The notes under the pieces were generated by a model. That model had not been told where the DNA came from. It saw only the letters and a program-made list of their open reading frames with translations, and made no database searches. Both the position numbers and the translations under genes were made by a program. From the IMG/VR virus record IMGVR_UViG_3300037725_000018, positions 62,001 to 126,000 of that record: a stretch of DNA of 64,000 nt, one strand, 5' to 3'. Positions within the stretch are counted from its first letter, which is position 1, and the number at the start of each line of letters is the position of its first letter. Shown in pieces: positions 21,313 to 62,821 of the stretch.

Positions 21313-21797
21313 GTCTTCTTTGCCATTTGTTGTTAAAACCGTTCACCATTTTATATTACTGCCTCACTTCTTCGGTGTTCCCGCCTTCGCAACGAAAACT
21401 TACAGGTAACGTAAAACTCTTGGCTTGATATAGCTATTGTAGTAGTAACGCACGTCAATCGGAATTGGATATTTTCCATTGTTGTGATAATAGCATATTG
21501 GGCTTGAAATCTTAAACACAACTATATTTTTCTTTCTAGACCACCGTTTAAAGTCTGAATTGCTTAAACCAGTATCATCTTCGTTAGACACTATTACCAT
21601 TGTTAAGGTGTTATCAAATTGTAGAGTCTTCATTTAGAAAGTCAAATTTGCGCTTCGCCTCATCTAGAGAAAGCTTGTTTAAGTCTTGAAAATCCGGTAC
21701 TTCGTAATAGTAGATTACAGAAACTTCTCGCCTTTTTTACGCTTTTTGGATAAAGTGTAGTCATTTTTTTGTTTGTTTTTTAATTGATAAATTCTTG

Positions 21798-22934
21798 TTA
21801 AAGAGTTCCTTCTGCAGCTTCAATGAGAACCTCTTTATCTTCGATTCCAGTTCGAAGCTGAAAGCTATGTGCCCGTTCGATCATTTCTCCAAACTTCGGG
21901 CCGGGTTTGTGCCCACGATCAATGAGGTCTTTCCCTTGAACAATCGGGTCAACTTCTACGCCTGTATCCCGAAACCACCGAAAATCTCCCAAACGAATGG
22001 CGCAAATAACCTTCTTAAAGTCTTTAAAGCGGTCTCCAAGTCTGTGTTGAAGCATTCTTACCTCAAAAGGGGTAGGGTTCGGGCTTGACGTTTGAATCGT
22101 TTCTAAACCCTTCTGGAAAGCCTTAACGCGACTTACCAAATTATTTGAAAGTTTGAGGCTTTCTCCAAGAGCCTCCGGGTCTTCCGCGTTTAAAAGAAAC
22201 GTTTCCATCCGGAGACGTTTCGGGGCCGAATCAATGGCAATCTTTCGAAAAACGTCCGTTTCCGGAAATCCAAAGTCTTCAAGAAGCCCAACCTTTTCCA
22301 TAATCGAAAGAAACCGGGAAGGTTTTTTGTCTTTAAACGCCTTCTTAACTTCCATGACCACCCGCTCGACGGAAACCACATTGGAAACGTCCGGGCCGAA
22401 TCGCTTCATCATTTGAAACGTTTCCGGTTCAATGTCAAACCCGAACCTTCCGGCAAACCGGGCTGCGCGAACAATCCGAAGGAGGTCTTCTTTGAACCTG
22501 CGCTTCGGAGCCCCAACGGTTTTTACAATGCCGTTTTGAAGGTTTTCTTTTCCCCCAAAGGGGTCAACAAGGTTTCCACTTGCGTCTATTGCCATTGCGT
22601 TGATTGTGAAGTCCCGGCGAGAAAGGTCCGTGGAAATGTCGTTTGCAAACTCTACGGTTGCTCTACGTCCATCAGTGGACACGTCCTTTCGAAAGGTTGT
22701 GATTTCAAACGGGAAACCATCGACCACGGCTGTAACTGTTCCGTGGTCTACCCCGGTCTTTTTGACGGGAACGCCTCTCTTCTCACACTTTTGAACCACA
22801 GTTTTCGGAACATCAGATGTTGCAAGATCAATGTCGTCAAACTCGCGGCCAAAAATTGAGTCCCGAACGCACCCGCCAACCGCATGAATATCGGAAAGAA
22901 AGTCAAACGTGTCAAGCGCCTCGTTTACTGTCAT
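21798..22934 (-). CDS. cca: tRNA nucleotidyltransferase (CCA-adding enzyme, class II)
   Basis: VGGCVRD, DIDLAT, EITTFR, DLSRRDFTINAMA, RFKEDLLRIVRAARF. Confidence 0.9.
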   Translation of the reverse strand: MTVNEALDTFDFLSDIHAVGGCVRDSIFGREFDDIDLATSDVPKTVVQKCEKRGVPVKKTGVDHGTVTAVVDGFPFEITTFRKDVSTDGRRATVEFANDISTDLSRRDFTINAMAIDASGNLVDPFGGKENLQNGIVKTVGAPKRRFKEDLLRIVRAARFAGRFGFDIEPETFQMMKRFGPDVSNVVSVERVVMEVKKAFKDKKPSRFLSIMEKVGLLEDFGFPETDVFRKIAIDSAPKRLRMETFLLNAEDPEALGESLKLSNNLVSRVKAFQKGLETIQTSSPNPTPFEVRMLQHRLGDRFKDFKKVICAIRLGDFRWFRDTGVEVDPIVQGKDLIDRGHKPGPKFGEMIERAHSFQLRTGIEDKEVLIEAAEGTL

Positions 22935-22962
22935 TGTTTTTTTTTTTTGTTTAGATTAAAAC

Positions 22963-23002
22963 AAAAAACGTGGAAACAGGCCATGCAAGACCCATTTCCA
23001 CG
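22963..23002 (-). terminator. Rho-independent terminator
   Basis: CGTGGAAA...TTTCCACG stem followed by TTTTTT. Confidence 0.65.
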
Positions 23003-23041
23003 CCAATGCCCTGTAGGAGGTGATTACAAGAGCAATTTGAT

Positions 23042-23608
23042 TTAGCCGATCATCGGTCCATCGGTGCGAATCACGTCGTACGTCTCACCGAACATGGTGA
23101 TTTCGTCAACGTTTTCAAGGCGATAGTCCCGGAGAATCACCCGGTCTTCAACGCCTTGCCGACTAGAACCGGACGAAGAATAAAGGTACTCTTCGATTTC
23201 TTCCCGGTCGATTTCGTTCCAGTTTTCATCGTAGTAAGTGGACGTTGCCGATTCCACCTTGACTTCAAGGTAAAACCGCTCTTCACCGTTCTTGACGTGT
23301 CGCACAAGCGGCGTTCCGTCAACCCGGCTACCCCACCGACGCGGTTCCGGTTCAAAATCCGGCTCGACGCCTTCTCGCTCCCTCTGGTTGTTCACAGAGT
23401 TTGCGTAGACGAAATTAACAAGCCCCCGAACTTCCGAAACTTTTCGGACGGTGCAATTTCCGTCTTCGTCGTGATACTCGTTGTAAGGAGTACCCCGACC
23501 ATTGACGGTTTTCCGCATACGCGGCGTTGTCACCGTTCGGAACGAAACGAACGACGCCCGTGAAGGCACGTTTTCAAGAACCGCTCGCAAGTCTTCAAGG
23601 CGAATCAT
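23042..23608 (-). CDS. Conserved phage hypothetical protein
   Basis: 188 aa with YANSVNNQREREG motif; own promoter and terminator. Confidence 0.7.
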   Translation of the reverse strand: MIRLEDLRAVLENVPSRASFVSFRTVTTPRMRKTVNGRGTPYNEYHDEDGNCTVRKVSEVRGLVNFVYANSVNNQREREGVEPDFEPEPRRWGSRVDGTPLVRHVKNGEERFYLEVKVESATSTYYDENWNEIDREEIEEYLYSSSGSSRQGVEDRVILRDYRLENVDEITMFGETYDVIRTDGPMIG

Positions 23609-23660
23609 AACTTCAAAAGTTTTTTGTGACCGTTTCTGTTAACCCCTTCCCTCCCTGACG

Positions 23661-23694
23661 CAATACTTACACGCAGGGAAGAAAGGCTGGTTTC
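23661..23694 (-). promoter_or_regulatory. Promoter of the recurring G(G/A)AAC-N16/17-NRT(T/G)WA class
   Basis: GAAAC-N16-CGTGTAA; near-identical copy at 61080-61108. Confidence 0.65.
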
Positions 23695-24356
23695 GCTTTG
23701 TATGTGAAGACGGGGTGAAGGTTTTATGAAGACCCTTCAATGTCGGTTTCAGAAAAGTCAACCCCCAACATAAAAGACTGCACTTCCCCGATGTTCATAA
23801 ACACATACTTTCGACCGGACGGTTTAATTTCGACGTATGCCCGTTCGATCCGGTTGTTTTTAAAAAGACGTTCAACTCCGGATAGGTCGTTTATAAGGCT
23901 GTCTACGTCTTCAAAACCGTTAATTTGAAGCATTCCGGTTTTGTTTGACGTAACCTCATTTACGACCAAATTTCCGGTTTCGTATCTTGAAAGATCGCTC
24001 ATAACAGGGAAAGGTTTTTTAATTGAGCTTGTGGTTTTCGATTCCAAAACGCCCAAGAGCACCGGACGCTAAACGCTGTTCCCGCTTCGTTTCAAACTCC
24101 ATCCGGTGAAACTCTTTATCGGACGGATGAGGATACGATGCATACGGAATAACGTCTTCTCCAGTATGCGTCGAAATAATGTCTGCCGCATTGTCCAGAT
24201 CGTCAGCGGGAACGTCAAGGTAGTAGTGAGCAGAAGAGTTCATCGGCTTGCTTTTTTATTAAAAGTGGTTCTTTGTCTATCTACCGTATAAAATGCGAAA
24301 GGCCGGGAGCGGTTCCCGGCCTTTCGGTGAAGATTCTATTAAGTGTTTTTCGTTCT

Positions 24357-24902
24357 TTATTGGACAAGTCCTTCTCTACCTACAGTCTTTTGGACATAAT
24401 CATACATCCCAATCCCGCTTGACACGCCTGCGTTTAGGCTTCGAACACTTCCAAACTGCGGGATGGATACAATATGGTCGCAAAGGTCAAGAACATTTTC
24501 GGACAAACCATTTCCTTCGCTTCCGAAAACCAAAAGAGGGTTTTCCGGCCAATCAAAAGAACGCAGGTCTTCGGTTTCGTAGTTTGAAAGTTGGTTTTCA
24601 AACCCAACCCATGTAAATCGGGTTTTCAAAAGACGGGCTTCAATTGGTACCTCGATGTGTTGCACGTCTGTATAATGATAGGTGCCAACCGCCCCGCGCT
24701 TGTCCCACTGCCTCTTTCCTACGTAAAAAACTCTTTGCGCCCCAAACGCATTTGCGTTTCGGACCAAGCTTCCGATATTAAAGTCTCCTTCCCAATTTTG
24801 CATCAAAACGGCAAAACCGTTGTTGTTTTCGGAAAGGTGCTTACGGATCTTTTCAGTTTCGTGGGATCGAAACTGGTCAAGTACGTTTCTGTTTGCTGAC
24901 AT
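24357..24902 (-). CDS. TrmH/SpoU-family RNA 2'-O-methyltransferase
   Basis: NIGSLVRNANAFG, LVFGSEGNGL and SIPQFGSVRSLNAGVS SPOUT motifs. Confidence 0.92.
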   Translation of the reverse strand: MSANRNVLDQFRSHETEKIRKHLSENNNGFAVLMQNWEGDFNIGSLVRNANAFGAQRVFYVGKRQWDKRGAVGTYHYTDVQHIEVPIEARLLKTRFTWVGFENQLSNYETEDLRSFDWPENPLLVFGSEGNGLSENVLDLCDHIVSIPQFGSVRSLNAGVSSGIGMYDYVQKTVGREGLVQ

Positions 24903-25648
24903 ATGAATTGAAGTAACCGTTTTGTTATAAAGAAAGCGCGTTCTTAAAAGTGCTCAAATGGCTTCGACTCTGAATGCCCGGTACTTAACCGATTTTTAGC
25001 CCAACCCAAAACGTATTTTGGATCTTCGTCATTTGAAATTGTGGTTAGGTTCACGACAGGAATAGCTTTGCCTTCTAAGCCTGACCGATACTCTTTGAAC
25101 TCTTCATAATTTGAGTTTTCATCAAACACAACAAGCATAAGCAGAAACCTTCCATTTACGTGATTTTGAAAAACTCGCGGTCAATTTCTCCCATAACGTA
25201 CGTTCCGTTTGAAGTGTCAAACTCGACGTAGGTTCTTCGAATTCCGGTCTTCACATTCCCGGCGTCGTATTCTTTCTTTTCTATAGAGTTGACGGTATAT
25301 TCACTGCCGCCAAGGGTGATTGTAACCGTTTTTCCATCATCAAGAGCCTGCTTTAATACTTCAAACATGTTCGTTATATGTATTTATTTATAATTGTTTT
25401 GGTCTTTCTGTAAGTAGGGACAAACGTTCTTGGCAGAAAACCTCTACCCTCTTGCTTTGGAAACTTTTGAACACAAACAAAACTGTCTTCTTCTTCAACC
25501 TTAAAGTCAAGAATGCAGAGAGGAAAAACTATATCCACTTTCCATCTTGTGCCACCATCTTCAGGATCGACCCGAACTGTAAGTCCGATTTCTTCTTTTA
25601 TCGAATCTTCAAGGTCTTCAAAAACGATAATCATACCTGACAAGTTAT

Positions 25649-25726
25649 TGGTACACTTGGGAGGACTCGAACCCCCAACCCCGGCATTAGAAGTGCCGTG
25701 CTCTAATCCAGTTGAGCTACAAGTGT
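25649..25726 (-). tRNA. tRNA-Arg(TCT)
   Basis: Cloverleaf, loop CTTCTAA, encoded CCA. Confidence 0.92.
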
Positions 25727-26003
25727 ATTTTTTTCATTGACTTTTTTGAAACTGGTTCCACCTGTCGGCCCATTCTTTGAAAGCTTGCCCGATCTCTTTT
25801 TCGTCTTCGGTTTTGTTACCGCAGACAAAAACGTTTTGTTCCCTGTCTACGGAGAGAATTTCTTCCCCTTCCGGGGATTTAAGGTCAAACGGGAAGATGT
25901 CCCAATACACACTTTCTTTATCGATTTTGACCTTGTTAAATTCAAAAACCTCTTTGTCATTAGACATGATCTATGAATTTGGATTTGTAATTGGGTTAAT
26001 ATG

Positions 26004-26076
26004 AGCGGGTGATGGGATTCGAACCCACGACCTTCTGCATGGCAAGCAGACGCTCTAACCACTGAGCTACACCCGC
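26004..26076 (-). tRNA. tRNA-Gly(GCC)
   Basis: Cloverleaf, loop TTGCCAT. Confidence 0.92.
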
Positions 26077-26216
26077 TGGCTCCTATTTGGTATAGCGCCG
26101 GGGGGCGCTCCATTAATGAGAAATCCTTAATGGCTCCACCTTTCTTTACTGTAAGGTCCGTGTGGCCGCGATCTTTTTACTAACTCGACACGCCTTCCGG
26201 TTGGCAAATCAAGCGT

Positions 26217-26540
26217 TCAAAAAGATTCGTTTGAAAAAATGATTTCATCCGGGTCTACATATACCGTTCCATCCCATCGGATATACACGCGCCTTTCTCC
26301 ATTTGTTCCTAAAGCCCGGTACATTTTTTTAAGCGTGTAAGAGCTATTTAGCTTTCCGGTGTTTAAATCTTTTTTTACAACCCTCGTTCCATTTGTGGCA
26401 TAGTATTTGACTTCAACAGTTTCAAGCCAAGCAAAAGTTCTATCTTCGTTTATAAGGCGAACCGGACGCCACGCAAACCACTTATGCCAGCCTTTTTCTA
26501 TCTTAGCAATTCGGTCTACGAAACTCTCTACGCCATTCAT
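26217..26540 (-). CDS. Hypothetical protein
   Basis: WHKWFAWRPV...AWLETV motif. Confidence 0.6.
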   Translation of the reverse strand: MNGVESFVDRIAKIEKGWHKWFAWRPVRLINEDRTFAWLETVEVKYYATNGTRVVKKDLNTGKLNSSYTLKKMYRALGTNGERRVYIRWDGTVYVDPDEIIFSNESF

Positions 26541-26595
26541 TTTTGACTTTTTGACTTTTTGACTTTAAGGGGTCTTTAAAAACTGAAAAATGCTG

Positions 26596-29155: not shown

Positions 29156-29262
29156 AGCTTCAAGTGTCTTTGATTGGGGTTTCCTTTCTTAACTTCACTA
29201 TATTCAATGCAACGCAAAGGAATTGGTTCCGAAAGAAACGGCACTTCACAAAAGCTTCATAC

Positions 29263-31560: not shown

Positions 31561-32220
31561 TCACCCGTACTGGCTTACGCCTTCAAACATATCATACCGA
31601 AGCTTCGCATATGGAAGTGTGTCGATATCGGAAGGCTTAGGATGGGTGAACATGATTCCTTCTACATAGGCATTGTTTTCATGCGCCTCTTGAAAAGACG
31701 TTCCGTGAAACGTCGAATAAAACAGAGGAATCAACCCGTTTTCAAACCAGCTTTCAATTGCGTCGAACGTCTTCGGGTACTTTCCCCAACTTTCGTATTG
31801 AAGCTTTCTTCGGCTATAAGAGCTAAAAGGAATCCAGATGTGTTCGTTTAGGTCATAAGGGTTTCCTTGAACTTTCGGGCCAACGACTTCCCCAAAGTGT
31901 TGACCGTCTGTTAGCGTTTCAACATACCCACGATCTACAGAATTTCGAATTGCATCTGTGATCCTACGGTCCCCATGAAAAGCAGGAACCCGGTTCTTTC
32001 GGTTCATAACTTGAACAATTTGCCCGTTTTGAATCAAAACAGACACGTTTGTTCCGTCAATTTTTTCAATTGCCATTGTACGCGGATCATTAAAAACCCA
32101 ATCGTAGCTATTGCCGTTGTCGTCTGTGTTTACTTCGTCAACGACAAAGTATCCACCGTTTCGCTCTTCACGAACAAACGGCGAATGAATCTTCGGCATG
32201 TCTCGCATAAAAGACTGCAT
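31561..32220 (-). CDS. RNA ligase-like nucleotidyltransferase (start moved off the tRNA-Ile overlap)
   Basis: EKIDGTN (KxDG), GEVVGPKVQGNP, EGIMF and AKLR ligase motifs. Confidence 0.8.
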   Translation of the reverse strand: MQSFMRDMPKIHSPFVREERNGGYFVVDEVNTDDNGNSYDWVFNDPRTMAIEKIDGTNVSVLIQNGQIVQVMNRKNRVPAFHGDRRITDAIRNSVDRGYVETLTDGQHFGEVVGPKVQGNPYDLNEHIWIPFSSYSRRKLQYESWGKYPKTFDAIESWFENGLIPLFYSTFHGTSFQEAHENNAYVEGIMFTHPKPSDIDTLPYAKLRYDMFEGVSQYG

Positions 32221-32343: not shown

Positions 32344-32681
32344 ATACTACTTTTGCTATCTATTGAATTGCTTCCTCGTTGAACTTACTAGCGGGTTCGC
32401 GGCTCACAATGACATTTGCTTCGTCGTCTTCGTACTGCATGTATTCCGCGTCAACCGCGTTCATAAACTCGTAAGCTTCCGGGTAGTGGTCTTGCATCGT
32501 AGAAGATGAAAGAATTCCACTCTTTCCGTCGCCGTTGTTGGACACGTGATAGACAACCATGATCTTGAGGCTTTTTGATTAGCGGTTAGCTTTCTTTCCT
32601 CGCAAATGCACCTATTACATGCGGAAAACCGCGTTGTGTTTCAAATAAAAGTGTGAAGCCTCTTTGAAGATATTTGATCTG

Positions 32682-35546: not shown

Positions 35547-35620
35547 ATGTTTTTTTAACCCACCTTTTTACACGTAGAGAGTAAAAACCTGTTTCATGAA
35601 AAGCAATTAAACTCAATTTG

Positions 35621-35702: not shown

Positions 35703-35856
35703 GAGAATGTTGCATCCACCACCTTAGCGGGATTCGAACCCGCGACTACCGCAATCTAGCGCGGCACTCTGACCTACCTGAGTTATAAGGTGTCACCAAC
35801 GGCGGTGGGATTCGAACCCACAGATACCGATCAAGCACCGTTACAGCAACATTCTC
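35703..35856 (-). ncRNA. Double tRNA-like RNA enclosed in an 11-bp stem
   Basis: GAGAATGTTGC/GCAACATTCTC encloses an anticodon-less mini-tRNA and a cloverleaf (35719-35792) with a 6-nt loop. Confidence 0.7.
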
Positions 35857-48728: not shown

Positions 48729-49457
48729 TTACACGCGAGCAAGCTTTCTCTGTTTCAAAACCTTGTGTGAAGATTCTGTGTAATCAATGGCGATTCTCTC
48801 TATCCCACTTTTTGAAATTTCAGAAATCGTCGGATGAATCTTTTTGTTCTTTTCCCACGCTTTTTCTGCTTTTTCTGTTTGAATGCCGGAGGCGTAAAGC
48901 CGAAGGTCGAAACAATTTCCAAGAATTTTCGCCATTGTTTCATAGAGCATAGAGCCGATCCCTTTTCTTCGGTGCTCTTCTTCTACGCAAATATAATCTA
49001 CAATAGGCTTGCCCACATGAAAATCAAAGAATTCTTCGTATTTTTCCCAATACCTCTCCTTTAGCTTTTTAACGTATTCCCAAAAAAGCGTCCTCTTTTC
49101 TTCTTCGGTCTTTTTAGAATACTGCTTTCGGTTATTTGAGATCCATTTGTCCCAAGATTCAACCTCTTTAGAGAACCCGGACGTATACGCTGCAATTGGA
49201 CCATTCATCTCCCGATCCGGGCGAATCACAGACTTTACGTCTCGTAGCCAACGAATAAAGCCAAAGTCCCCGGAATACTTCTCTTCCCAAGTTTCTTCTG
49301 GAACGTAAGAAACTTTAATGTGTCCGACGCTGGTTTTGGGATTTATGAACTTTGGGTGATCTAACTTCCCGTAAGCTTCAAGCGAATGGACGACCCAACC
49401 CCGGTCGTCAATTTCTTTCTCTTCGGTGAACTCAAATTCAACACCTGAGAGATTCAT
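48729..49457 (-). CDS. GNAT-family acetyltransferase (start moved off the tRNA-Ser overlap)
   Basis: ICVEEEHRRKGIGSMLY acetyl-CoA motif A. Confidence 0.75.
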   Translation of the reverse strand: MNLSGVEFEFTEEKEIDDRGWVVHSLEAYGKLDHPKFINPKTSVGHIKVSYVPEETWEEKYSGDFGFIRWLRDVKSVIRPDREMNGPIAAYTSGFSKEVESWDKWISNNRKQYSKKTEEEKRTLFWEYVKKLKERYWEKYEEFFDFHVGKPIVDYICVEEEHRRKGIGSMLYETMAKILGNCFDLRLYASGIQTEKAEKAWEKNKKIHPTISEISKSGIERIAIDYTESSHKVLKQRKLARV

Positions 49458-50225: not shown

Positions 50226-50771
50226 TCATTTTTGTTTCGGATTTAAATTTCTTTTAAAGTGTTTGCGGTTGAAAAACATTAAAAGACGCGCAAGAAAGTT
50301 CCGGATAGGTCCACGGTCATGCAAAAGCACAATTTCAAGAAGACGGCGTCCATCGGTTTTATAAGCCTTCCCGTTTCTGTCAATCCCTTTATTGGGGGTT
50401 AACGAACCCATTAAGATTTTCGCGTTTACAAACAGGAAGGCAAAGGAAATAGCGGACATAAACCCGTAGAAAATGCTTCCAGCCATAAAAAGCGAAAAGA
50501 AAAAGTTTACCGATTCTGCAAAAAGAGAGAACAAAATGTAAGTAAAAATCGGCCCGGAAGCCACGATCATGAGGGTGTCATTAACTGGAAGTCTTCTTGG
50601 GACATTAAAGCCTATGCACCCACTTTTTCCACTTGAAGAAATATGAAGATAGTCCGGGATGTTTCCTGTGCATATAGATCCAAAGTAATGCCCAACCTCG
50701 TGAAACGCAACCGAAATTAGATAAAACGGATAAAGAAGAAGTTCAATAAAGTTTTTTATCTTTGTTTTCAT
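50226..50771 (-). CDS. M50-family (site-2) membrane zinc protease
   Basis: HEVGH in a TM segment, VASGP, LTP..TDG. Confidence 0.75.
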   Translation of the reverse strand: MKTKIKNFIELLLYPFYLISVAFHEVGHYFGSICTGNIPDYLHISSSGKSGCIGFNVPRRLPVNDTLMIVASGPIFTYILFSLFAESVNFFFSLFMAGSIFYGFMSAISFAFLFVNAKILMGSLTPNKGIDRNGKAYKTDGRRLLEIVLLHDRGPIRNFLARLLMFFNRKHFKRNLNPKQK

Positions 50772-50809
50772 ATTGTAACTGGCTTTAATTGCTAATGTAA
50801 ACTTGGTAA

Positions 50810-50896
50810 CGGAGAGCGGAGGCATCGAACCTCAAGATTTTTCAATCTCCATCTGATTTCGAATCAGCGATAGGTGCCAAACCTACGTCACTCTCC
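50810..50896 (-). tRNA. tRNA-Ser(CGA), atypical
   Basis: Loop TTCGAAA, long variable arm, extended D-stem. Confidence 0.75.
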
Positions 50897-52373: not shown

Positions 52374-52757
52374 GTTTATTCATTCATATGTAATAGCCTA
52401 CAAGTTTTTTTGTTCCCAGATCAAGAACGCGCTTTTAGTTTTAATCTGTATTTAACACGTCAATCATATTTTCAATGCCTTCAACGTTTAAAGATACCGC
52501 GTCAATGTTTTCAAACATCGAAAGCACATTAGGTTTAATGAGAGACAGGTAGAATTTTTCTCCACCAACTACAATTGCGGTTTCGTCTTCTAAGAACGTG
52601 AAATCCAATCCGGGATTTCGATGTTTTAAAACCGCAACCGTGCAGTAGTCTAGATTTTCTCTTCCTATGTCTTCTACAATTTTTTTTTCTTGATCTGTGA
52701 GTTTTGATTTTGAGATTTCTTCAATATTGAAGTTCACTTGATTAGTTATTTGTGGGA

Positions 52758-54551: not shown

Positions 54552-55261
54552 TTGTCAAATATGAATGCTAAATCTTGTTAATGATTTTCATCGCCTGCTT
54601 GTGAAGCCATTTCCGGATGTAACGCTTGAGGATCTTCTTCGGGCTTAGAGAAGCCCAAGTCTCAATGTCGGAAATGTGCTTTCTAATTTTGTAAATTTTG
54701 CTTGAAAGACTCATAACAGTCTGAAAGCTGTTTCTTTCCTAATGCATTTAGGTAAACGCCGCCTCCTTTACGCTGTTCCCTTCTCGCAAGTGTGATATAC
54801 GGAGTTTACAGCCTCTTCACATTTTTTACAATAGAAACCATTTCCAAAGCCCAAAATTACAACGTTGGGATTCCCGGAAACAAGACGGTTAATAATCTTT
54901 TTCGTTTTGATCGCGCAAGTCTGAAAGAAGTTTTGTGTTTCCTCGATCATAGTCTTTTCTTGCTTGTTCAATTAGGTCGTTTAGTCTTCCTTGCCGAACA
55001 TTTTCTTCAATTTGAATGTCCCACTCGTCTTTTGCTCCTAGCTCTTCGTAAATGTCTCTCGCAATATCGTAGAATTTCGAGTCACAAAGCTTTGCTTCCG
55101 AAAGAAGAACATAAAACGCAAGACGCATGTTAGCGATTTCCCGGAGAAGAAGGTCGTTTTCTTCGTTCGGTGGCGGGTTCTTTCTTTGGTTTTTCTCCTT
55201 GATTTTTTCTGCTTTCAAAATGTAATTTTTGACCCTCTCTAGCTTTTCTCTGTCCATCCTA

Positions 55262-56014: not shown

Positions 56015-57112
56015 CGCTCTTGACTGAATTTAAATGCCACTACATAGTTAACCTCTTTCCCACTTACTAATATGTAGCTTTTCAGGGTAGTAAAAATTCA
56101 CCTTCGCAGAAGCGTTTGAAACTCTACATGGTTTTCTGGTCTTAACGACCGTTTCGTAAATTACGCTTCCGGAGTCAAGGTGTTTGAAGTTTGTATGTGT
56201 GTGGTGATGTTTTTCGATAAGATCAGAATCTACTTTCAACGACCAACTATAAAAATCGTCTTCAAGTTTAACGTTGTCAACAAAAAATCCAATCCACCAA
56301 AGCCCGGAAACCGTTTTTCCGGGGCCAACAAGCAGTTTTGGGTCAAAATCTATGCTACAAGGTGTGGCCTTTTTAAAGTACAGAATGTCTTTTTCGGCTT
56401 TAAGTTTATCCATTTCTTCTTTACTTTAGGCGATTTACCACTTTCTTTCTCCACTCGTTTGTAAGAAGGTCTGCCCGGAGGATATCATCTTCGGTAGGTG
56501 GACTACATGTGACCCCGTGAGTCATTGAACTCCATTTTTCCTGAATTCGAAAAAGAGTACGTTCAAGCCACTGGTCAACGTTTTCTTCTTCGATTTCAAA
56601 CTCAAAACGCCCATACGGGTGTCCATCAATGTAGTACGAAACAAGATACTTTGCGTCTTCTTCTTCTGACATTTTACTTGTTGTAATCTGTTTGTTAATG
56701 TTATCTACAAGTCTTTCAATGCGTGTAATTTAATTAGTCTACTACCATCTTGTTTCTTACATATGAATGATTGCCGTTTATTTAAAGGGTATTTTACAGA
56801 AGGTTTGCAAGAACATTGTTTACTAATCGTCAAATACGGTAGGCCAGAGTTCTTCAGGAGTGTTTGGGTCTTTCTTTCGTTCTTCTACGATTTTTTTAAA
56901 CCGTTTATTCATACCTTCTTTAAAGTGTTTGTAGAATTTTTTTCTTTCCTGTTTGGTTTCGGAAACAATATATGCGTATATTAGAGACAGAGCTTCAAAT
57001 ATTACTTCAAACTCCGGTTCAGGGATAGAATTTTCCTCCATAAATATAATTTCAAAAGGATAAGTGATGCATAAGCTTTTGAGATATTAATGCGATGCAA
57101 TAATATATAGGT

Positions 57113-57588: not shown

Positions 57589-57891
57589 ATGTGTGATTTA
57601 TGTCCAATTTTTTGCCTTTTTGTGTGCCTTTGTAATAAACATTTTTCGGGAACGTATCGAGCAATCTTCATAAACATACCGTTCAAGCCGACGATGTTGA
57701 CTGGCAAACTCTTCAACGTATGCTTTAAAGTCTTCCCGGCTTTTAGCACGGTTGGCTTTTGCCGCTTGAACCGCAACCATGTTTATTAGCTCTTCTCGGT
57801 CTGTCATTTTTTTTCGTGTGTTTCTCTTTGTTAACTCACTCTATAAAACCGCAATCTCGACATGTTGTTCCAAAATCAAATGTGAAGAAAT

Positions 57892-57926
57892 AAAAAAGCC
57901 CCGATCCGCGCCAAACGAACCGGGGC
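57892..57926 (-). terminator. Rho-independent terminator
   Basis: GCCCCGGTTCG...CGGATCGGGGC-TTTTTT. Confidence 0.8.
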
Positions 57927-58078
57927 AAGCTGTCGCCTATGCAACGTAAGCCAACCAGTCATGGCACGAAGGTCACATTCCCATCCCGAACGCTTGAAAA
58001 GCGTGAGAAGCGGTAAAAACGCTGTTGAAATTTCTGGTTTTGAAAGGTCATGACAGTTAGCTGAATTTGCATAATGTG
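57927..58078 (-). ncRNA. Independently transcribed rod-like small RNA (6S-like architecture)
   Basis: Nested stems TATGCAA/TTGCATA, AGCTAAC/GTTGGCT and GTCATG/CATGAC; CTATATATT upstream and a terminator downstream. Confidence 0.6.
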
Positions 58079-58593
58079 TTAATATATAGGTCCAACGCCC
58101 GATTTTTTCAGTTTAATGAACGATCTCCCATTTGTATTCTCCAGAACAGGTCCTGCGTTTAAACGTTTTCAAAGAAAAACACGGAAGAGAAAGCCCAACC
58201 TTCTCGCAAGATTTTTTAATCCCGCTTCGAAACTTAGAAGGAACTGCTTTCCCGTTAACGTAATCCGGCTCTTTATGAAAGAAAAAACAGGTCCCGTCCT
58301 CGTCTACGCCAATGTATCTGTGCCAGCTTTCAATTTCTCTTTCAATTCCAAGTTCATTCATCGCATTTTTTCTTCTATTTTGCTAGAAAGTTTTGACTTT
58401 GAAACTTCAAACCCTCCAAGTCTAGTGTACCAGTCAAGCCCAATCTCACTGCTCAAAAGTCTTTTAGAAATCCTATACTTGTCGGGTTTGATAGGATCGG
58501 GCTTAATTAGATAATCGCCTTCAGAAGTGCCATTCAAAATAGCAGAGGAAACATCACCTTCTGAAATTTCTGTTCTTTCAATTATAATGAACA

Positions 58594-58944
58594 TCAAACC
58601 GCGTGTCTATTAGAATGAACATCGCCACCGCACTTCGGGCAAACAGGGTTTCCATCTTCGTCCCTATTTACGTCACCAGAATCAAACATCTGGTCCCAAC
58701 CGCAACGGCGATCCTCTTTTTTCACCTTTCGAATGTGTTTGCAATACCCGTTTTCGTCGGTGCCGTTTTGAAACTTATACGAACTACACGTGCAAGACCA
58801 ATCGTTTTGATACTTATCTTCCCGATGGTGATCGGGACCAAACTTCACCGTGTATGTCTTTGAAGAGCTTGAAGACTCTACTCCCGTAGAAAACGTTCGA
58901 GCCGTGTTGCAAGCCCACTTGTGAACAACCGTATTCGCTGGCAT
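58594..58944 (-). CDS. SWIM zinc-finger protein
   Basis: WSCTC...CKH plus CPKCG. Confidence 0.85.
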   Translation of the reverse strand: MPANTVVHKWACNTARTFSTGVESSSSSKTYTVKFGPDHHREDKYQNDWSCTCSSYKFQNGTDENGYCKHIRKVKKEDRRCGWDQMFDSGDVNRDEDGNPVCPKCGGDVHSNRHAV

Positions 58945-59064
58945 AGCTTAAAAAAGGTGTGTTTGTTCTCTTCTCTATTTCACTTTCTGTAACGGCGCAG
59001 GGTAAGTTTTGTTTCCTACTTTACAAAAACTTAATTCATGAAATTCATGGCTTCACCATTTAAG

Positions 59065-59709
59065 CTATTTATTAAGCTCGTTTGGTTCAACCTCTTTTCG
59101 AAGCCAATCTTCATCGGTTTGCACGTGATCGGGACGAACCCATTTCGCTAAATGCAGACTAAAGTCTTCAAAATCAAACCCCGAAACAGTTCGCATTACA
59201 TAACCCTCTACCGGATCTTCGGATGTTTCATTCAAACGCTTCTCGTTGAACTTTCGGATCTTACTTTCATCATACATCCCCCGCCAAATAACAGGGACGT
59301 GATTTAAATCCAAGAGGCCACACCACTCCACAGTTTTATCCCAACTTAGGCACTTGTTTTCTTCGTTCCAAATGGAAAACACGTAGAAGTATGAATCCAG
59401 ATTTTCATACTTGATGGAGTGTTTTGCGTACACGTTTTCCCCACAAATTCGCCACCCGTCCGGAAGTTGGTGCCCAACCCTTCCGGCTGTCTTTCCTGCC
59501 CATGTGCGGGAGGGGTGATACGGCGTCTGTAGGCTTCGTGCATGGTATTCGCCGTTGGAGTAGATGGTTGTGTTTTCACCGTCCATCTTCTCCGTTAAAA
59601 TGACTTCACGGCCTTCAAAAAAGCTAACGTCTTCATGGTAATCATCGTCTCTGTGCTTTTCAGGAGACCACGGAACGTGTTTGGTTGAAGGGTACTTTTG
59701 CTTTTTCAT
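59065..59709 (-). CDS. RNA ligase (Rnl2-like nucleotidyltransferase domain)
   Basis: KYPSTKHVPWS, TEKMDGEN, GEN, FYVFSIW, EGYV and AKWVR motifs. Confidence 0.88.
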   Translation of the reverse strand: MKKQKYPSTKHVPWSPEKHRDDDYHEDVSFFEGREVILTEKMDGENTTIYSNGEYHARSLQTPYHPSRTWAGKTAGRVGHQLPDGWRICGENVYAKHSIKYENLDSYFYVFSIWNEENKCLSWDKTVEWCGLLDLNHVPVIWRGMYDESKIRKFNEKRLNETSEDPVEGYVMRTVSGFDFEDFSLHLAKWVRPDHVQTDEDWLRKEVEPNELNK

Positions 59710-59875
59710 GGGTCTAACTTTAAAATGAGCCTTCTTACTACTTCGGGTTTTTGTGTTGAAGCTTCTCTGTTGCAAATGTAAACCGAATCCGTGTCGTATG
59801 TAAAAAACTTCGTGGCAACGGACTTGTTCCTAGCAACAACAACGATCATGTTATTTAAATTTCAACCAGACACTT

Positions 59876-59909
59876 AAAAAAATGGGGGCAAGCTTTTTGG
59901 CTTGCCCCC
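59876..59909 (-). terminator. Rho-independent terminator
   Basis: GGGGGCAAGC...GCTTGCCCCC followed by ATTTTTTT. Confidence 0.75.
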
Positions 59910-59937
59910 GGTATTGATTCAAATGTTTGGCGCGTTT

Positions 59938-61035
59938 TTAAAGGCCAAACGGATTCGGAACGACGTTTTCGCAATCAAGAGTCTTCTTTTCAAGAAGATC
60001 CCCGGCTCGGCGTTGAAGCCGCACTTGATCTCCGTCCGCAATATTGAATCCATCGGACGTGTAATCGTGACTTGCAAACCGGGTAATCCCGTTAATCACG
60101 TCCCAAACGGACACGTCGGTTAGAGCGTTCTTACGTTGCGTGATCGACATGTCCCGAACGTTTGGAGAGTTATCAAGGGAAGCATATGCGTCTCGAATGT
60201 GGGCAACCGGAATAAGCTTTTCAACCACCGCATTCGGCCCGTCCTCTGCCTTGTATTCATTAATAAGGCTTCGGGACTTCATTACTTCGTCCACGCTTGC
60301 GCGTGTGTTTGCGGCCCGGTCAATGTAATCGGGCAGGTCCTCTCGAATGAAGCCGTTTTGGGCTAGGGTGTCAAACTTCTCGAAGAAGCTTTCCATGTTG
60401 CGGTCGTCAAGCCCGGAAATGCTGTAATCGGAATCGTACGTTCCGATAAGCTGGTTAGTACACCACAGCCGCTCAATTTGCGGGAGAAACTTCATTTCTC
60501 CACGGTCCATCATGAACGTCATTCCCGTACTAAACATTTCATCTTCCATGCCTTGAAAACCTGTAAGGTCAAGCTGTTTGTTTGCCTTCACGCTAACAGC
60601 GACCTTATTGCTTCCCGCAAGAAAATTGTTGTCGAAAAGGTCAAGCCCGTAACGGTCCATCATACGCTCTACAAGGTCGAAAAACCCTTCGGCGGTAATG
60701 TGATTCATGTCCGTGCTAAAACCGGACACAGACCCGTTCTTGCGGTCAAGAGCAACGGACACGTTAAGGCCCTTCTTGTTTGCAAGCCCGGAACGAAGTG
60801 CCCGGATAAGGCCAACACGTGCGTCGTCTCCAAGGACCTCTTCAACGTGATTTCCAAACTTGTTGGACATACCAACAATGTCGTGAAGATCCTCTACGGC
60901 AGACCGTTCCATTTGAAGGTTCTTGCCTTCAACCGAAACAGAGTTTAGACTTTCAAGATCAACATTTGAAAGCTCTGTTTCGTAGTATACAGGCTGCTCG
61001 TCAATTGCGGTTTGCTTAAAGCTGGAGTAATCCAT
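59938..61035 (-). CDS. DUF932-like protein
   Basis: RLWCTN motif and SVWDVINGITRFASH. Confidence 0.6.
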   Translation of the reverse strand: MDYSSFKQTAIDEQPVYYETELSNVDLESLNSVSVEGKNLQMERSAVEDLHDIVGMSNKFGNHVEEVLGDDARVGLIRALRSGLANKKGLNVSVALDRKNGSVSGFSTDMNHITAEGFFDLVERMMDRYGLDLFDNNFLAGSNKVAVSVKANKQLDLTGFQGMEDEMFSTGMTFMMDRGEMKFLPQIERLWCTNQLIGTYDSDYSISGLDDRNMESFFEKFDTLAQNGFIREDLPDYIDRAANTRASVDEVMKSRSLINEYKAEDGPNAVVEKLIPVAHIRDAYASLDNSPNVRDMSITQRKNALTDVSVWDVINGITRFASHDYTSDGFNIADGDQVRLQRRAGDLLEKKTLDCENVVPNPFGL

Positions 61036-61079
61036 ATTGAAGTGTTTTGGTTTTGGGTTTCTTCGTTTAATGCACTAAG

Positions 61080-61108
61080 TTACACGCAGGCAAGAAGAGT
61101 TTTGTTTC
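61080..61108 (-). promoter_or_regulatory. Promoter of the G(G/A)AAC-N16/17 class
   Basis: GAAAC-N17-CGTGTAA upstream of the 61035 start. Confidence 0.65.
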
Positions 61109-61169
61109 ATGAAGAGTATGTGAAGGGTTGGCGGCTTTTATCACCAACCCTTCACCACATCTGTTTTAT

Positions 61170-62252
61170 TTAGTTGTTGTTCCACGTTCGACGTTCAAGC
61201 CCGTAACGGTCCACAAACTTTTGAACGTAGTATCGGGAAACGGATTCGGGAATGATTCCACGGTCCCGAAGTGCCCGGTGCGTTGCAGACACGTTGCCGT
61301 TGTTTTCGTTTAGAACCTCTCTCGCAACGTCTACGTCAAGGTCTTCCATAATGTCATACTCTTCCCCGCCCGTAGACGAACTTTCGTTAGAAGCGTTCTC
61401 TGAGGCTTGAGTGGACTCTCCATTTTCGGACGTTCCGTTAAGAAGGTCTTCAATGGAATCGAAGTTATTTTTCTTTTCGTTTCTCTTCCGCTCTTTTTCG
61501 GCAAATTCACGGGCTTCGTCGTGGGTTTTCTTTTTGTGCTCGTCAAACTCGATGCTACTGTTCGTGATTTGAAAATACAGCCGTTCGTTTCCGTTTCCAC
61601 GCCGATTTTTGTCAAACATCATATACCGTTCTTCCCCATCCCACCGAAGCATAAGGCTTGCGGTGATAAGGTGCTTTAGCATGTTTGACCCGGTAAATTC
61701 ACCGGACTTGTTTACCTGTTGGATAAGGCCGAAAGAAGTGTAGTACACATCCCCGTCTACTTCCACCCCTTCGGTCATGTCGTACATGAGGTTGATCAGA
61801 TTAAGAATCGTTGACTTTTTTGTGGACGTGTTCATCGAATAGGCAAATTCAAGAAACGCGGCCCAACTGTCAACGACCACATAATCATACCCTTTTTGAA
61901 GCTCTTCTTCAAAGTCTTCAACCGGGTTACTTCCGGTTCGTGTATCCACGTACCAAACAGGAATGTCCGCAAACTCCGGAAACCTACGTGTCATGTATGC
62001 CACGTCATTCTTCCGCATTTCAGCAGATACAAACAGGACATTATATCCCGCTTCATTCATGTTCGATAGCATGTCCATCGTAAACGTAGACTTTCCGATT
62101 CCCGGATCACCGAAAATCATCGTAACCGTTCCACGGGAAAGCCCACCATCTGCGGACAGGAAATCATCCAGAACATCATGCCCGGTCGAAAGAGGCTCCC
62201 AAAGCTTAGGATCAATCGTTTCATTCGAAATCTTCGTCGTCTCTACAGACAT
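61170..62252 (-). CDS. RecA-superfamily ATPase (RadA/Sms-like N-terminal domain) with C-terminal HTH
   Basis: GDPGIGKST, FVSAE, VVVDS, NKSGEFTGSNMLKH, KNR. Confidence 0.85.
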   Translation of the reverse strand: MSVETTKISNETIDPKLWEPLSTGHDVLDDFLSADGGLSRGTVTMIFGDPGIGKSTFTMDMLSNMNEAGYNVLFVSAEMRKNDVAYMTRRFPEFADIPVWYVDTRTGSNPVEDFEEELQKGYDYVVVDSWAAFLEFAYSMNTSTKKSTILNLINLMYDMTEGVEVDGDVYYTSFGLIQQVNKSGEFTGSNMLKHLITASLMLRWDGEERYMMFDKNRRGNGNERLYFQITNSSIEFDEHKKKTHDEAREFAEKERKRNEKKNNFDSIEDLLNGTSENGESTQASENASNESSSTGGEEYDIMEDLDVDVAREVLNENNGNVSATHRALRDRGIIPESVSRYYVQKFVDRYGLERRTWNNN

Positions 62253-62821
62253 AAAAGGACGTTGGCGTTTGTGATTGGTTGCTTTCTTTTAAATCCAATC
62301 TTTCAAACAAGCCTTTTTTAAAACAGTTCCGATTTCAAATGTGAAGCTTCTGTTTAGAAACTTAGGTTCGTTTAATCTTCATCATCTTCATTGTCGTCAT
62401 TTTGGGAGCGGCTTTTGTCATTTGCCATAGCCCGAAGCTTTTTTGAATCTTGCCTGCTCTTCCAATACTTCTTTTGACTTTCTTCAGAAGCGGTGCCTTT
62501 GAGCTTTTGCTTCATTTGATCGGTCTTCCCTTCTTTTTCTGCCTGCTCTTTTTTTTCTTTGAACTTATCAAAAAAATCTGACATTATACTACGTTACATG
62601 TTTTTAGATGTTATTTTATCAATTTAAAAGTAAATTTTCTCTCTGTATGCGGCTTCTAATAGCATATACTCGTTGAGAATATGTATACTTTACTTTGTCA
62701 TTTATATATTTTGAATTAATTGTGAAGAAGAATATACTTCTTTCTCTAAGACTTAATATTTCAAGGTCTGGGAACTCGCTGGATTCATTTTCAGTTAGTA
62801 TAACAATAGCCATCGCTGTTA

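What the first reader, a model, noticed from the sequence alone, without database searches (positions are those of the whole stretch)
21355..62330. At least 12 copies of an ECF-sigma-like promoter, G(G/A)AAC-N16-NRT
Seen on the minus strand: G(G/A)AAC at 21377, 23690, 24312, 29226, 34299, 36083, 41898, 52412, 57867, 59011, 61104 and 62326. Each is followed after 16 nt (17 in one case) by CGTGTA, CGTTA, TGTTTA, CATTTT, GGTTTT or similar, often with CTTCA(C/T)A further upstream. Known: GGAAC-N16/17-CGTT is the typical ECF sigma consensus, unlike sigma70 TTGACA or the Bacteroidota TAnnTTTG. Inference: early transcription uses a host stress (ECF) sigma or an unusual primary sigma. The phage M50 site-2 protease (50226-50771) could help release such a sigma from its anti-sigma.
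Basis: partly seen in the sequence, partly recalled or inferred. Interest (0 to 1): 0.6.

Follow-up and report, generated by a model that had tools for sequence, protein, structure and literature searches.

The report
ECF-like early promoter family in jumbo phage
An uncultured 223-kb phage from tidal-flat sediment drives its pre-late genes from about 40-50 copies of one conserved promoter module that looks like a bacterial stress-sigma (ECF) promoter, and it is unknown which sigma factor reads it.

Summary
The motif is real and larger than reported. All 12 listed sequences are at the stated places: 8 are strong members and 4 are weak. The window holds 15 strong copies and the 223-kb genome 41 confident ones.

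The refined module is [TTAACAAA-N2-]CTTCACA-N9-tTG(G/A)AACc-N16(17)-(g)C(G/A)T(G/T)TAA. A conserved start region and leader follow, and the -35 G lies a median 75 nt before the start codon. Sites are about 85% intergenic at 18 bits or more and co-oriented with the gene below. They precede replication, nucleotide and RNA-repair genes, small ORFs and tRNAs.

A second motif, CTATATAT(A), precedes tail sheath, portal, tail fibre and endolysin genes, so it marks late genes.

The module is conserved in two related phages, often before orthologous genes.

The phage's only sigma-like gene (window 12431-13204) is closest in fold to T4 gp55. It lies 64 nt downstream of one of these promoters and most likely reads the late motif.

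The ECF-like motif is therefore the pre-late promoter class, probably read by host RNA polymerase with a host ECF-type sigma. That step is inferred, not shown. No host or RNA data are available. The M50 protease link is unsupported.

The parts
13241..13270 (-). E-class promoter (no upstream box); -35 G at 13268, 64 nt before the start of the sigma-like gene
   Evidence: 17.0 bits, spacer 16
12431..13204 (-). Phage sigma-like protein (257 aa). It has a sigma region-2 fold plus a C-terminal helix-turn-helix domain and is closest in fold to T4 gp55. It is the proposed reader of the late CTATATAT promoters.
   Evidence: Orthologs in LR756508 (53%) and Mel-JY01 (36%) partly match TIGR02937. At least 497 relatives. 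AF2 mean pLDDT 76.9. VIA-align best match 7d7c_F (gp55), Z 10.7; sigmaE 1or7 Z 9.4
19749..19792 (-). E-class promoter with TTTCACA box
   Evidence: 16.2 bits, box 9.5, 92 nt to CDS; the ortholog in L060 also has one
23667..23709 (-).
   Evidence: 21.3 bits. The orthologous 188-aa gene is also preceded by an E site in LR756508 and in L060
24289..24332 (-).
   Evidence: 17.0 bits; hairpin plus T-run; Pfam SpoU
29203..29232 (-).
   Evidence: 15.6 bits, conserved leader downstream
32615..32658 (-).
   Evidence: 18.2 bits, box 13.9
35568..35597 (-). E-class promoter 49 nt before tRNA-Lys
   Evidence: 15.5 bits
36060..36089 (-).
   Evidence: 13.9 bits
37715..37759 (-). E-class promoter with box
   Evidence: 17.3 bits
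41875..41904 (-).
   Evidence: 18.1 bits; Pfam
48729..48772 (-).
   Evidence: 20.5 bits, box 13.8, 76 nt to CDS
54752..54781 (-). E-class promoter without box
   Evidence: 16.5 bits
57844..57887 (-).
   Evidence: 16.1 bits; terminator at 57926-57898
61080..61125 (-).
   Evidence: 20.1 bits
62303..62346 (-).
   Evidence: 16.4 bits; Pfam; the LR756508 ortholog also has an E site
21355..21381 (-).
   Evidence: 4.7 bits
34275..34318 (-).
   Evidence: 2.8 bits, box 9.9
52390..52416 (-).
   Evidence: 11.0 bits
58988..59015 (-).
   Evidence: 11.3 bits
12180..12187 (-). Late-class motif CTATATAT just downstream of the sigma-like gene (contrast class)
   Evidence: the L060 relative has the same arrangement
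8180..8187 (-). Late-class motif CTATATAT inside the baseplate module
50226..50825 (-). Small membrane protein (199 aa) with HEVGH; sub-threshold M50B-like metalloprotease
   Evidence: Pfam PF13398, 24.4 bits against a cut-off of 26; sequence; no solved relatives

Best explanation
The G(G/A)AAC-N16-CGTGTAA elements are the phage's pre-late (early/middle) promoters. There are at least 41 copies, perhaps about 50.

A full module has four parts:
- an upstream box, TTAACAAA-N2-CTTCACA, centred near -47 and present in about half of the sites;
- a bipartite core with ECF-type -35 (tTGGAACc) and -10 (gCGTGTAA) elements 16 or 17 nt apart;
- a conserved start region (aGTG);
- a conserved leader of about 30-55 nt.

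In about a quarter of the copies the -35 lies inside the hairpin of the upstream gene's terminator. These copies are compact terminator-promoter cassettes, like the PeSLs of T4-type phages.

Proposed working (inferred): bacterial RNA polymerase carrying a group-4 (ECF-type) sigma that the phage does not detectably encode, most likely a host ECF sigma, starts transcription here from the beginning of infection. One of these promoters lies 64 nt upstream of the phage's own gp55-like sigma gene (window 12431-13204). That sigma then redirects the polymerase to the single-element CTATATAT(A) promoters of the structural and lysis genes.

Shown: the motif, its statistics, its placement, its gene classes, its conservation in relatives, and the sigma fold.

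Inferred: promoter activity, timing, and the identity of the sigma.
For: Motif and statistics:
- 39 sites above 16 bits against about 3 per strand in shuffles; 28 of them are intergenic.
- The 32 intergenic sites above 15 bits have a co-oriented gene or tRNA 32-312 nt downstream in the listing (my reading of that listing, not a separate count).
- The -35 G lies a median 75 nt before the start codon (interquartile range 66-82.5); the spacer is 16 nt in 35 and 17 nt in 6 of 41 sites.

Gene classes:
- Downstream genes include a RecA-like recombinase, RNA ligases, SpoU methylase, a DNA-polymerase-like protein, small ORFs and tRNAs.
- CTATATAT precedes tail sheath, adaptor, portal, tail fibre and endolysin genes.
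- No sigma70-type or Bacteroidota sigmaA-type motif is enriched, so E is the only non-late class found.

Conservation:
- The same three-part motif occurs in LR756508.1 (CGTGTAAT is enriched upstream of its genes) and in Logan contig L060.
- 6 of 15 orthologous gene pairs keep an E site, against 3.5% of all LR756508 genes.

The sigma:
- The genome has no Sigma70_r2 or TIGR02937 match, and the sigma-like gene has no paralog.
- That gene is closest to T4 gp55 (Z 10.7).
- Its family also occurs in Flavobacterium phage immuto, Microcystis phage Mel-JY01, Rhodothermus phage RM378 and 14 MAG contigs. Those examined lack E but have AT-rich late-type motifs.
- Immuto's early promoters are of its host's sigmaA type. 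By analogy, early promoters follow the host and the shared sigma follows the late motif.
- The late-motif variant (TATATAT against TATTTA) goes with the variant of the sigma region-2 helix (A[YW]TKG against AKNY[CL]), while E is the same across both.

ECF hallmarks (AAC, CGT, spacer 14-17) are as described in PMC5758882.
Against: - No transcription start site or RNA data exist; no listed run holding the sequence is on record as RNA.
- The host is unknown.
- The strict motif is not enriched in 401 sampled Bacteroidota genomes: 0-5 per genome, the same as the reversed-pattern control.
- Relying on a normally sequestered stress sigma for the first transcripts of a lytic phage has, to my knowledge, no established precedent.
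- CGT proper is present in only about half of the -10 elements. The invariant letters are T, T and A, so the -10 is ECF-like rather than canonical.
- An E promoter directly before the sigma-like gene is also what sigma autoregulation would look like.
- That protein's region 2 resembles sigmaE almost as well as gp55 (Z 9.4 against 10.7).
Confidence: 0.5

Rival explanations
1. The phage's own sigma-like protein (window 12431-13204) reads the E promoters. It would act as a two-domain ECF-like sigma that autoregulates from the E promoter 64 nt upstream of its gene. The late motif would then be read by something else.
For: - Its orthologs match the ECF model TIGR02937 over region 2.
- One relative is named sigma24 family by JGI.
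- The model has a C-terminal four-helix helix-turn-helix domain that could bind a -35 element.
- sigmaE region 2 aligns at Z 9.4, rmsd 3.9.
- An E site precedes the gene, as for autoregulated ECF sigmas.
Against: - The best structural match is the T4 late sigma gp55.
- The family is present in immuto, Mel-JY01 and 14 MAG contigs that lack E.
- In LR756508 and L060 the gene has no E site before it.
- E is identical across phages whose sigma recognition helix differs, while the late motif varies with that helix.
- If this sigma were needed for E, nothing detectable could start the first round of transcription.
Confidence: 0.15
2. E is the housekeeping promoter type of an uncharacterised host lineage that barely uses Shine-Dalgarno sites. 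The phage simply copies its host's primary-sigma consensus, as immuto does for Flavobacterium.
For: - E is the only non-late class and must work at time zero.
- Immuto's early modules are built the same way around its host's sigmaA consensus.
- tTGGAA/tTGAAA overlaps a TTGACA-like hexamer.
- Shine-Dalgarno-like sequences precede only 12 of 384 genes, which points to an unusual host group.
Against: - No described primary sigma has an AAC/CGT bipartite consensus with a 16-nt spacer. This is my own knowledge; PMC5758882 gives the ECF hallmark.
- In the group around Bacteroidota, including Chlorobaculum, the RpoD motif is TTG/TAnnTTTG-like (bioRxiv 10.1101/172254).
- The sigma family's MAG contigs are mostly Bacteroidota, and 401 Bacteroidota genomes show no excess of the strict motif.
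Confidence: 0.15
3. An undetected phage factor reads or enables E. It could be a highly diverged or virion-delivered sigma. It could also be a MotA/AsiA-like appropriation of the host sigma that uses the CTTCACA box as its DNA site.
For: - The CTTCACA box, often with TTAACAAA, sits at a fixed 9 +/- 1 nt from the -35 in 23 of 41 sites and is sometimes duplicated at 11-nt spacing. This looks like a protein-binding site.
- Phage sigmas are often too diverged for family models (PMC7826278).
- About 80 proteins are shared with LR756508 but not with the phages that lack E.
Against: - No candidate was found: Pfam and TIGRFAM searches, a profile search for paralogs, and PHROG scans of 20 shared proteins gave no regulator.
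- Half of the sites, including strong ones, lack the box.
Confidence: 0.15
4. The elements are not promoters. They would be terminators, recombination cassettes or operator sites that happen to resemble a bipartite promoter.
For: 12 of 41 overlap hairpins and 6 are terminator-like. The cassettes are long repeats between small ORFs, as PeSLs are (PMC4122927).
Against: 29 of 41 have no hairpin. Two blocks at a fixed 16/17-nt spacing, strict co-orientation, and a fixed distance to start codons are promoter properties. PeSLs themselves contain promoters.
Confidence: 0.05

Closest known systems
ECF (group 4) sigma-dependent promoters, e.g. Bacillus subtilis sigmaW (TGAAAC ... CGTA) and the GGAAC-N16/17-CGTT type
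   Same: AAC in the -35, a CGT-like -10, a 16/17-nt spacer, and close adherence to consensus (PMC5758882).
   Different: - The -10 is extended to (g)C(G/A)T(G/T)TAA, with T, T and A as the invariant letters.
- There is an added CTTCACA box at about -47 and a conserved leader.
- At least 41 copies sit in one phage genome.
- No cognate sigma or anti-sigma has been identified.
PeSLs (promoter-early stem-loop), the composite terminator/promoter cassettes of T4-type phages (PMC4122927, PMC2839356)
   Same: Short conserved cassettes that combine a terminator hairpin and an early promoter. They are repeated between small variable ORFs and are found in a T4-related myovirus lineage.
   Different: The promoter part is ECF-like rather than sigma70-like. 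In the hairpin-bearing copies the -35 lies inside the hairpin rather than beside it. A role in recombination was not tested here.
T4 transcription cascade: early/middle promoters, then the gp55 late sigma reading TATAAATA
   Same: There are two promoter classes. The late one is a single AT-rich octamer before structural and lysis genes. A gp55-like sigma gene lies downstream of a pre-late promoter.
   Different: The sigma is longer (257 aa) and has a C-terminal helix-turn-helix domain. Partners like gp33 and gp45 were not sought. The pre-late class is not sigma70-like.
Early promoter modules of Flavobacterium phage immuto (seen here)
   Same: Highly repeated early modules with a conserved leader before small ORFs, in a phage that carries the same sigma family.
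   Different: Immuto's core is the Bacteroidota sigmaA type (GTTG-N20-TATATTTAG), not AAC/CGT.
phiEco32 gp36, a phage-encoded ECF-family sigma (recalled from memory, not checked here)
   Same: A phage that uses ECF-family sigma chemistry.
   Different: In phiEco32 the phage encodes the sigma, and as I recall the promoter is a single element for middle and late genes. Here no phage ECF sigma is found and the motif is bipartite and pre-late.

Membership tests
ECF sigma-dependent promoter | Conserved AAC in the -35 element | tested here: met
   G(G/A)AAC: G, A, A and C each about 93% in the 19-site model, and kept in sites found without that model's upstream box
ECF sigma-dependent promoter | CGT-type -10 element | tested here: inconclusive
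   First position C 50%, second G 60% or A 26%, third T 93%. The motif extends to TkTAA. It is CGT-like but not strictly CGT
ECF sigma-dependent promoter | Narrow spacer (14-17 nt) | tested here: met
   16 nt in 35 and 17 nt in 6 of 41 sites
ECF sigma-dependent promoter | A cognate ECF sigma (sigma2 + sigma4) that reads it | not testable with these tools
   None is detectable in the phage. The host is unknown. No excess of the strict motif in 401 Bacteroidota genomes
ECF sigma-dependent promoter | Transcription starts a few nt downstream of the -10 | not testable with these tools
   No listed run holding the sequence is on record as RNA
PeSL-type composite terminator/promoter cassette | Terminator stem-loop joined to an early promoter, repeated between small ORFs | tested here: met
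   12 of 41 sites have a hairpin over the -35 and 6 have a T-run. Sites are intergenic between small ORFs. This holds for a subset only
PeSL-type composite terminator/promoter cassette | Sigma70-type early promoter | tested here: not met
   TTGACA-N16-18-TAnnnT has 9 matches, 3 of them intergenic, which is no enrichment
Bacteroidota sigmaA promoter (TTTG / TAnnTTTG) | TAnnTTTG at -7 enriched upstream of genes | tested here: not met
   30 intergenic matches against 23.7 expected, mostly on the plus strand opposite the predominantly minus-strand genes. Immuto does show this motif
T4 gp55-like late sigma (for the gene at 12431-13204) | Sigma region-2 fold closest to gp55 | tested here: met
   7d7c_F: Z 10.7, 122 residues aligned, rmsd 5.5. 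Other sigma2 domains score Z 8-9.9, so the margin is small
T4 gp55-like late sigma (for the gene at 12431-13204) | Single AT-rich -10-type late promoter before structural genes | tested here: met
   CTATATA: 30 of 42 matches intergenic against 5.8 expected. It lies upstream of tail sheath, portal, tail fibre and endolysin genes. No conserved -35 is seen
T4 gp55-like late sigma (for the gene at 12431-13204) | Co-activators like gp33 and the sliding clamp gp45 | not tested
   Not searched
Site-2 protease / peptidase M50 (ORF 50226-50825) | HExxH zinc motif in a membrane helix | tested here: met
   HEVGH at residues 42-46 in a hydrophobic stretch
Site-2 protease / peptidase M50 (ORF 50226-50825) | Family model above its curated threshold | tested here: not met
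   PF13398 M50B-like: 24.4 bits against a cut-off of 26. Pfam reported no other family, including no PDZ domain. No solved site-2 protease was found by sequence
Site-2 protease / peptidase M50 (ORF 50226-50825) | Cleaves an anti-sigma factor | not testable with these tools
   No anti-sigma factor or host is known

The most novel reading that the evidence does not exclude
A lytic jumbo phage of a host that barely uses Shine-Dalgarno sites (probably Bacteroidota) runs its whole pre-late programme on a host ECF (stress) sigma rather than on the housekeeping sigma. That programme spans at least 41 promoters, including those for its tRNA arrays and for its own late sigma. The phage would thus hijack an envelope-stress response that infection itself may trigger. 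The promoters are packed into terminator hairpins as mobile cassettes.
Probability: 0.35. Interest if true: 0.75.

Novelty: new variant of a known kind. Interest (0 to 1): 0.55.

Why it matters
Phage early promoters are expected to copy the host's housekeeping consensus. Here, a related group of at least three large uncultured phages uses a different, ECF-type bipartite consensus for all non-late genes, and none of them has a detectable ECF sigma of its own.

If a host ECF sigma reads these promoters, this would be a new take-over strategy in which the phage depends on, or provokes, a stress sigma. It would also give a ready set of about 40 natural promoter variants for studying an ECF sigma's specificity.

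If instead a phage factor reads them, a new sigma or sigma-appropriation system remains to be found.

In either case the motif is a practical marker. It can be used to annotate transcription units in these phages. It can also be used to look for their host, by searching candidate host genomes for the same motif before an ECF sigma/anti-sigma operon.

Tried and rejected
- **Phage-encoded classical sigma.** Sigma70_r2 gave no match. TIGR02937, r4 and r4_2 gave only helix-turn-helix hits. Those hits belong to two GIY-YIG homing endonucleases, so this was rejected.
- **Paralogs of the sigma-like gene.** A profile search of all ORFs and of the six frames found none.
- **Close relatives in IMG/VR.** The RecA-like protein found nothing. 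The three-part DNA pattern gave 4 single hits, which I estimate to be about chance level.
- **Transcription start mapping.** No listed run holding the sequence is on record as RNA; all listed holders are tidal-flat DNA assemblies.
- **Host from protein look-alikes.** The Atlas search on the CCA-adding enzyme was uninformative, with Pseudomonadota clusters commonest.
- **Relatives of a virus record.** The genome search refuses this.
- **Strict motif in the host phylum.** 401 sampled Bacteroidota genomes gave 0-5 matches each, equal to the control. Five MAGs holding sigma-family contigs were also at chance.
- **Regulator among proteins shared with LR756508 only.** Twenty were scanned against PHROGs. 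They were metabolic or of unknown function, with no regulator.
- **Sequence search of solved structures.** Nothing useful for the sigma-like profile or the M50-like protein.
- **Sigma70 and Bacteroidota sigmaA consensus scans.** No enrichment.
- **First structure job.** It failed and was rerun.

Full report
**Context**

The window is bases 62001-126000 of a single 223,357-bp IMG/VR virus record that CheckV rates complete. The DNA recurs in several tidal-flat metagenomes, and no listed run holding it is on record as RNA.

Almost all genes lie on the minus strand. The window carries 40 tRNA genes and a tmRNA. Only 12 of 384 predicted genes have a Shine-Dalgarno-like sequence, as in phages of Bacteroidota-like hosts.

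By its baseplate wedge protein, the nearest deposited relatives are:
- the 484-kb uncultured phage LR756508.1 (51% identity);
- Microcystis phage Mel-JY01 (46%);
- Flavobacterium phage immuto (39.5%).

**The observation**

The pattern as written is too loose to mean much: 94 matches against 53 expected.

I seeded a model on sites with TTCA(C/T)A 8-10 nt upstream of G(G/A)AAC. The spacing there peaks sharply at 9 nt, in 15 of 45 cases. I refined the -10 block iteratively and then scanned the genome with the -35 and -10 blocks only.
- Above 16 bits there are 27 minus-strand and 12 plus-strand sites, against about 3 per strand in Markov shuffles.
- 28 of these 39 lie in the 13.8% of the genome that is intergenic.
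- Many sites not used for training were recovered. They carry the same downstream sequence, and often the upstream box, although neither was part of the scan.

Seven strong sites in the window had been missed.

**Anatomy**

An alignment of 41 confident sites gives this consensus:

[TTAACAAA-N2-]CTTCACA-N9-tTG(G/A)AACc-N16-(g)C(G/A)T(G/T)TAA-N3-aGTG

A purine-rich leader (AAGGAAA) and an A/C-rich tract follow.

- The spacer is 16 nt in 35 sites and 17 nt in 6.
- The upstream box is present in 23 of 41 sites.
- The -35 G lies a median 75 nt (interquartile range 66-82.5) before the start codon.
- The 32 intergenic sites above 15 bits have a co-oriented gene or tRNA 32-312 nt downstream in the listing. 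This is my reading of that listing, not a separate count.
- In 12 of 41 sites a hairpin overlaps the -35. Six of these have 10-12-bp G+C-rich stems followed by a T-run, so they look like the terminator of the upstream gene, with GGAAC at the junction of arm and loop. This recalls the composite terminator/promoter cassettes (PeSLs) of T4-type phages (PMC4122927).

**Two promoter classes**

Word statistics on intergenic DNA revealed a second motif, CTATATAT(A). CTATATA has 30 of 42 matches intergenic, against 5.8 expected. It precedes the tail sheath, head-tail adaptor, portal, tail fibre and endolysin genes, so it marks late genes.

The ECF-like class, called E here, precedes different genes:
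- a RecA-like recombinase, two RNA ligases, a SpoU methylase and a vWA/DUF2828 protein;
- a DNA-polymerase-like protein;
- blocks of small ORFs on both strands, and tRNAs.

Neither TTGACA/TATAAT nor the Bacteroidota TAnnTTTG is enriched. E is therefore the only non-late class I could find.

**Conservation**

- The strict pattern GRAAC-N16/17-CGTGTAA occurs 8 times here and 6 times in LR756508.1. In that phage the E sites cluster at 380-448 kb. CGTGTAAT is among the most enriched upstream words there, and a CTTCA(C/T) box sits at the same distance.
- A Logan contig (L060) whose sigma-like protein is 58% identical also has E sites, with box and leader.
- Of 15 E-driven genes with an LR756508 ortholog, 6 have an E site upstream there too, against 3.5% of all its genes. 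By my binomial estimate the probability of this by chance is about 1e-5.
- The 188-aa gene at window 23042-23608 keeps its E promoter in all three phages.
- E is not found in immuto, in Mel-JY01, or in 14 MAG contigs that carry the sigma family.

**Who reads E?**

The phage genome gives no Sigma70_r2 or TIGR02937 match. The region-4 hits are helix-turn-helix repeats of two GIY-YIG homing endonucleases.

In LR756508 and Mel-JY01, however, TIGR02937 partly matches a syntenic ORF about 4 kb from the baseplate wedge gene. Its ortholog here is window 12431-13204: 53% and 36% identical to those two, with at least 497 relatives in metagenomes.
- An AlphaFold model (mean pLDDT 76.9) matches almost only sigma factors. 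The best match is T4 gp55 (Z 10.7), followed by region-2 domains, including sigmaE at Z 9.4.
- It also has a C-terminal helix-turn-helix domain.
- It has no paralog in the genome.
- It lies 64 nt downstream of an E promoter.

Four points assign this sigma to the late motif rather than to E:
1. Its best fold match is gp55.
2. The family also occurs in immuto, Mel-JY01, Rhodothermus phage RM378 and 14 MAG contigs. In immuto and Mel-JY01 I found AT-rich late-type motifs, and no E in those phages or the MAG contigs.
3. Immuto's early promoters are plainly of the Flavobacterium sigmaA type (GTTG-N20-TATATTTAG, with a conserved leader). In this lineage, early promoters follow the host.
4. The late-motif variant (TATATAT here and in L060; TA(C/T)TTA or TATTTATA in LR756508, Mel-JY01 and immuto) goes with a variant of the sigma's region-2 helix. 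E, by contrast, is the same in phages of both variants.

None of this is proof. An E site before the sigma gene is also what autoregulation would look like.

**What remains**

E must be read from the start of infection by something the phage does not detectably encode. Its AAC/CGT-like bipartite form with a 16-nt spacer is the ECF hallmark (PMC5758882). In Chlorobaculum, a relative of Bacteroidota, RpoD promoters are Bacteroidetes-like, and a separate ECF-like motif with AAC exists (bioRxiv 10.1101/172254). Bacteroidetes average 22.5 ECF sigmas per genome (PMC7826278). Ten of the 14 MAG contigs that carry the sigma family are binned with Bacteroidota.

A host ECF sigma is therefore my leading reading, at moderate confidence. 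The strict motif is not enriched in 401 sampled Bacteroidota genomes. This argues against E being an abundant promoter type in that phylum, but it cannot exclude a small regulon or an unsampled host.

**The M50 idea**

ORF 50226-50825 has an HEVGH motif in a hydrophobic stretch and a sub-threshold Pfam M50B-like hit (24.4 bits against a cut-off of 26). Pfam reported no other domain, and no solved site-2 protease is related by sequence. Nothing links it to a sigma/anti-sigma pair.

**Verdict**

"ECF-like pre-late promoter" is supported. "Host ECF sigma" is plausible but unproven. The protease link is speculative. Novelty: a new variant of known kinds, namely an ECF-type promoter and a PeSL-like cassette within a gp55-type cascade.

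Noticed in passing
window 8180-8187, 12180-12187, 57103-57110, 58082-58089 (minus strand); 26 copies genome-wide: A second conserved motif, CTATATAT(A), is a single AT-rich element upstream of tail sheath, portal, adaptor, tail fibre and endolysin genes. It is probably the late promoter, analogous to T4 TATAAATA. Relatives have variants: CTA(C/T)TTA in LR756508, TATATTTATA in Mel-JY01 and TATTTATAAT in immuto.
   Followed up: yes
window 12431-13204 (-): An unannotated sigma-like protein family (at least 497 metagenomic relatives, typically about 238 aa) sits in the baseplate module of distant T4-like phages that infect mostly Bacteroidota. Its best fold match is T4 gp55, and it has an added C-terminal helix-turn-helix domain.
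   Followed up: yes
window, about +15 to +45 from each E-class -10 (e.g. 23625-23660, 29160-29195): The E-class leaders are conserved: a purine run (AAGAGAGGGAA) followed by a C-rich run and then ACCAAA. Several could form a short GGGG-loop-CCCC stem-loop. This lies too far (25-35 nt) from the start codon to be a Shine-Dalgarno site. LR756508 leaders share ACCAACC.
   Followed up: partly
upstream of many CTTCACA boxes (e.g. genome 158400, 171510, 201070, 202590; outside the window): A further element, TTAACAA(A), lies 2-3 nt upstream of CTTCACA. The CTTCACA box is sometimes duplicated at 11-nt spacing (genome 173061/173072 and 173953/173964). This looks like a protein-binding array.
   Followed up: partly
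genome 219563 (-) and 219594 (+), outside the window: Two E-class promoters lie back to back and overlap on opposite strands, forming a divergent pair between a minus-strand and a plus-strand gene.
   Followed up: no
window 17837-63956: There are 40 tRNA genes for all 20 amino acids, plus a 415-nt tmRNA (63329-63743) with an unusually long predicted tag. One tRNA-like gene has an odd anticodon loop (35719-35792).
   Followed up: partly
window 21798-22934, 24357-24902, 31561-32220, 59065-59709; genome 138929-139900: An RNA repair and maturation set is scattered among the tRNAs: a CCA-adding enzyme, a SpoU methylase, two RNA ligases and a polynucleotide-kinase-like ATPase.
   Followed up: partly
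genome 16271-17371 (-) and 23152-23985 (+), outside the window: Two GIY-YIG homing endonucleases; the first carries up to four tandem helix-turn-helix repeats, the second NUMOD3 plus a single C-terminal one. They explain the only Sigma70 region-4 hits in the genome.
   Followed up: yes
late region, genome 24-60 kb (outside the window) and window 4-14 kb: The word (A)TAAGTTA is enriched in intergenic DNA: TAAGTTA has 18 of 30 matches intergenic against 4.1 expected. It often lies just after a stop codon or 15-25 nt downstream of CTATATAT. Its function is unknown.
   Followed up: no
L009 (MW353176.1, 62.3-77 kb): Flavobacterium phage immuto has about 20 near-identical early modules: AAAGTTGC-N20-TATATTTAG-GTATCAATAATTAAAAC. 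This is a Bacteroidota sigmaA-type promoter with a fixed leader. The 242-feature record carries only CDS and tRNA annotations in the parts I retrieved.
   Followed up: partly
whole genome: Shine-Dalgarno-like sequences precede only 12 of 384 genes here and 32 of 676 in LR756508, against 64 of 216 in the cyanophage Mel-JY01. This suggests a Bacteroidota-like host for the first two.
   Followed up: partly
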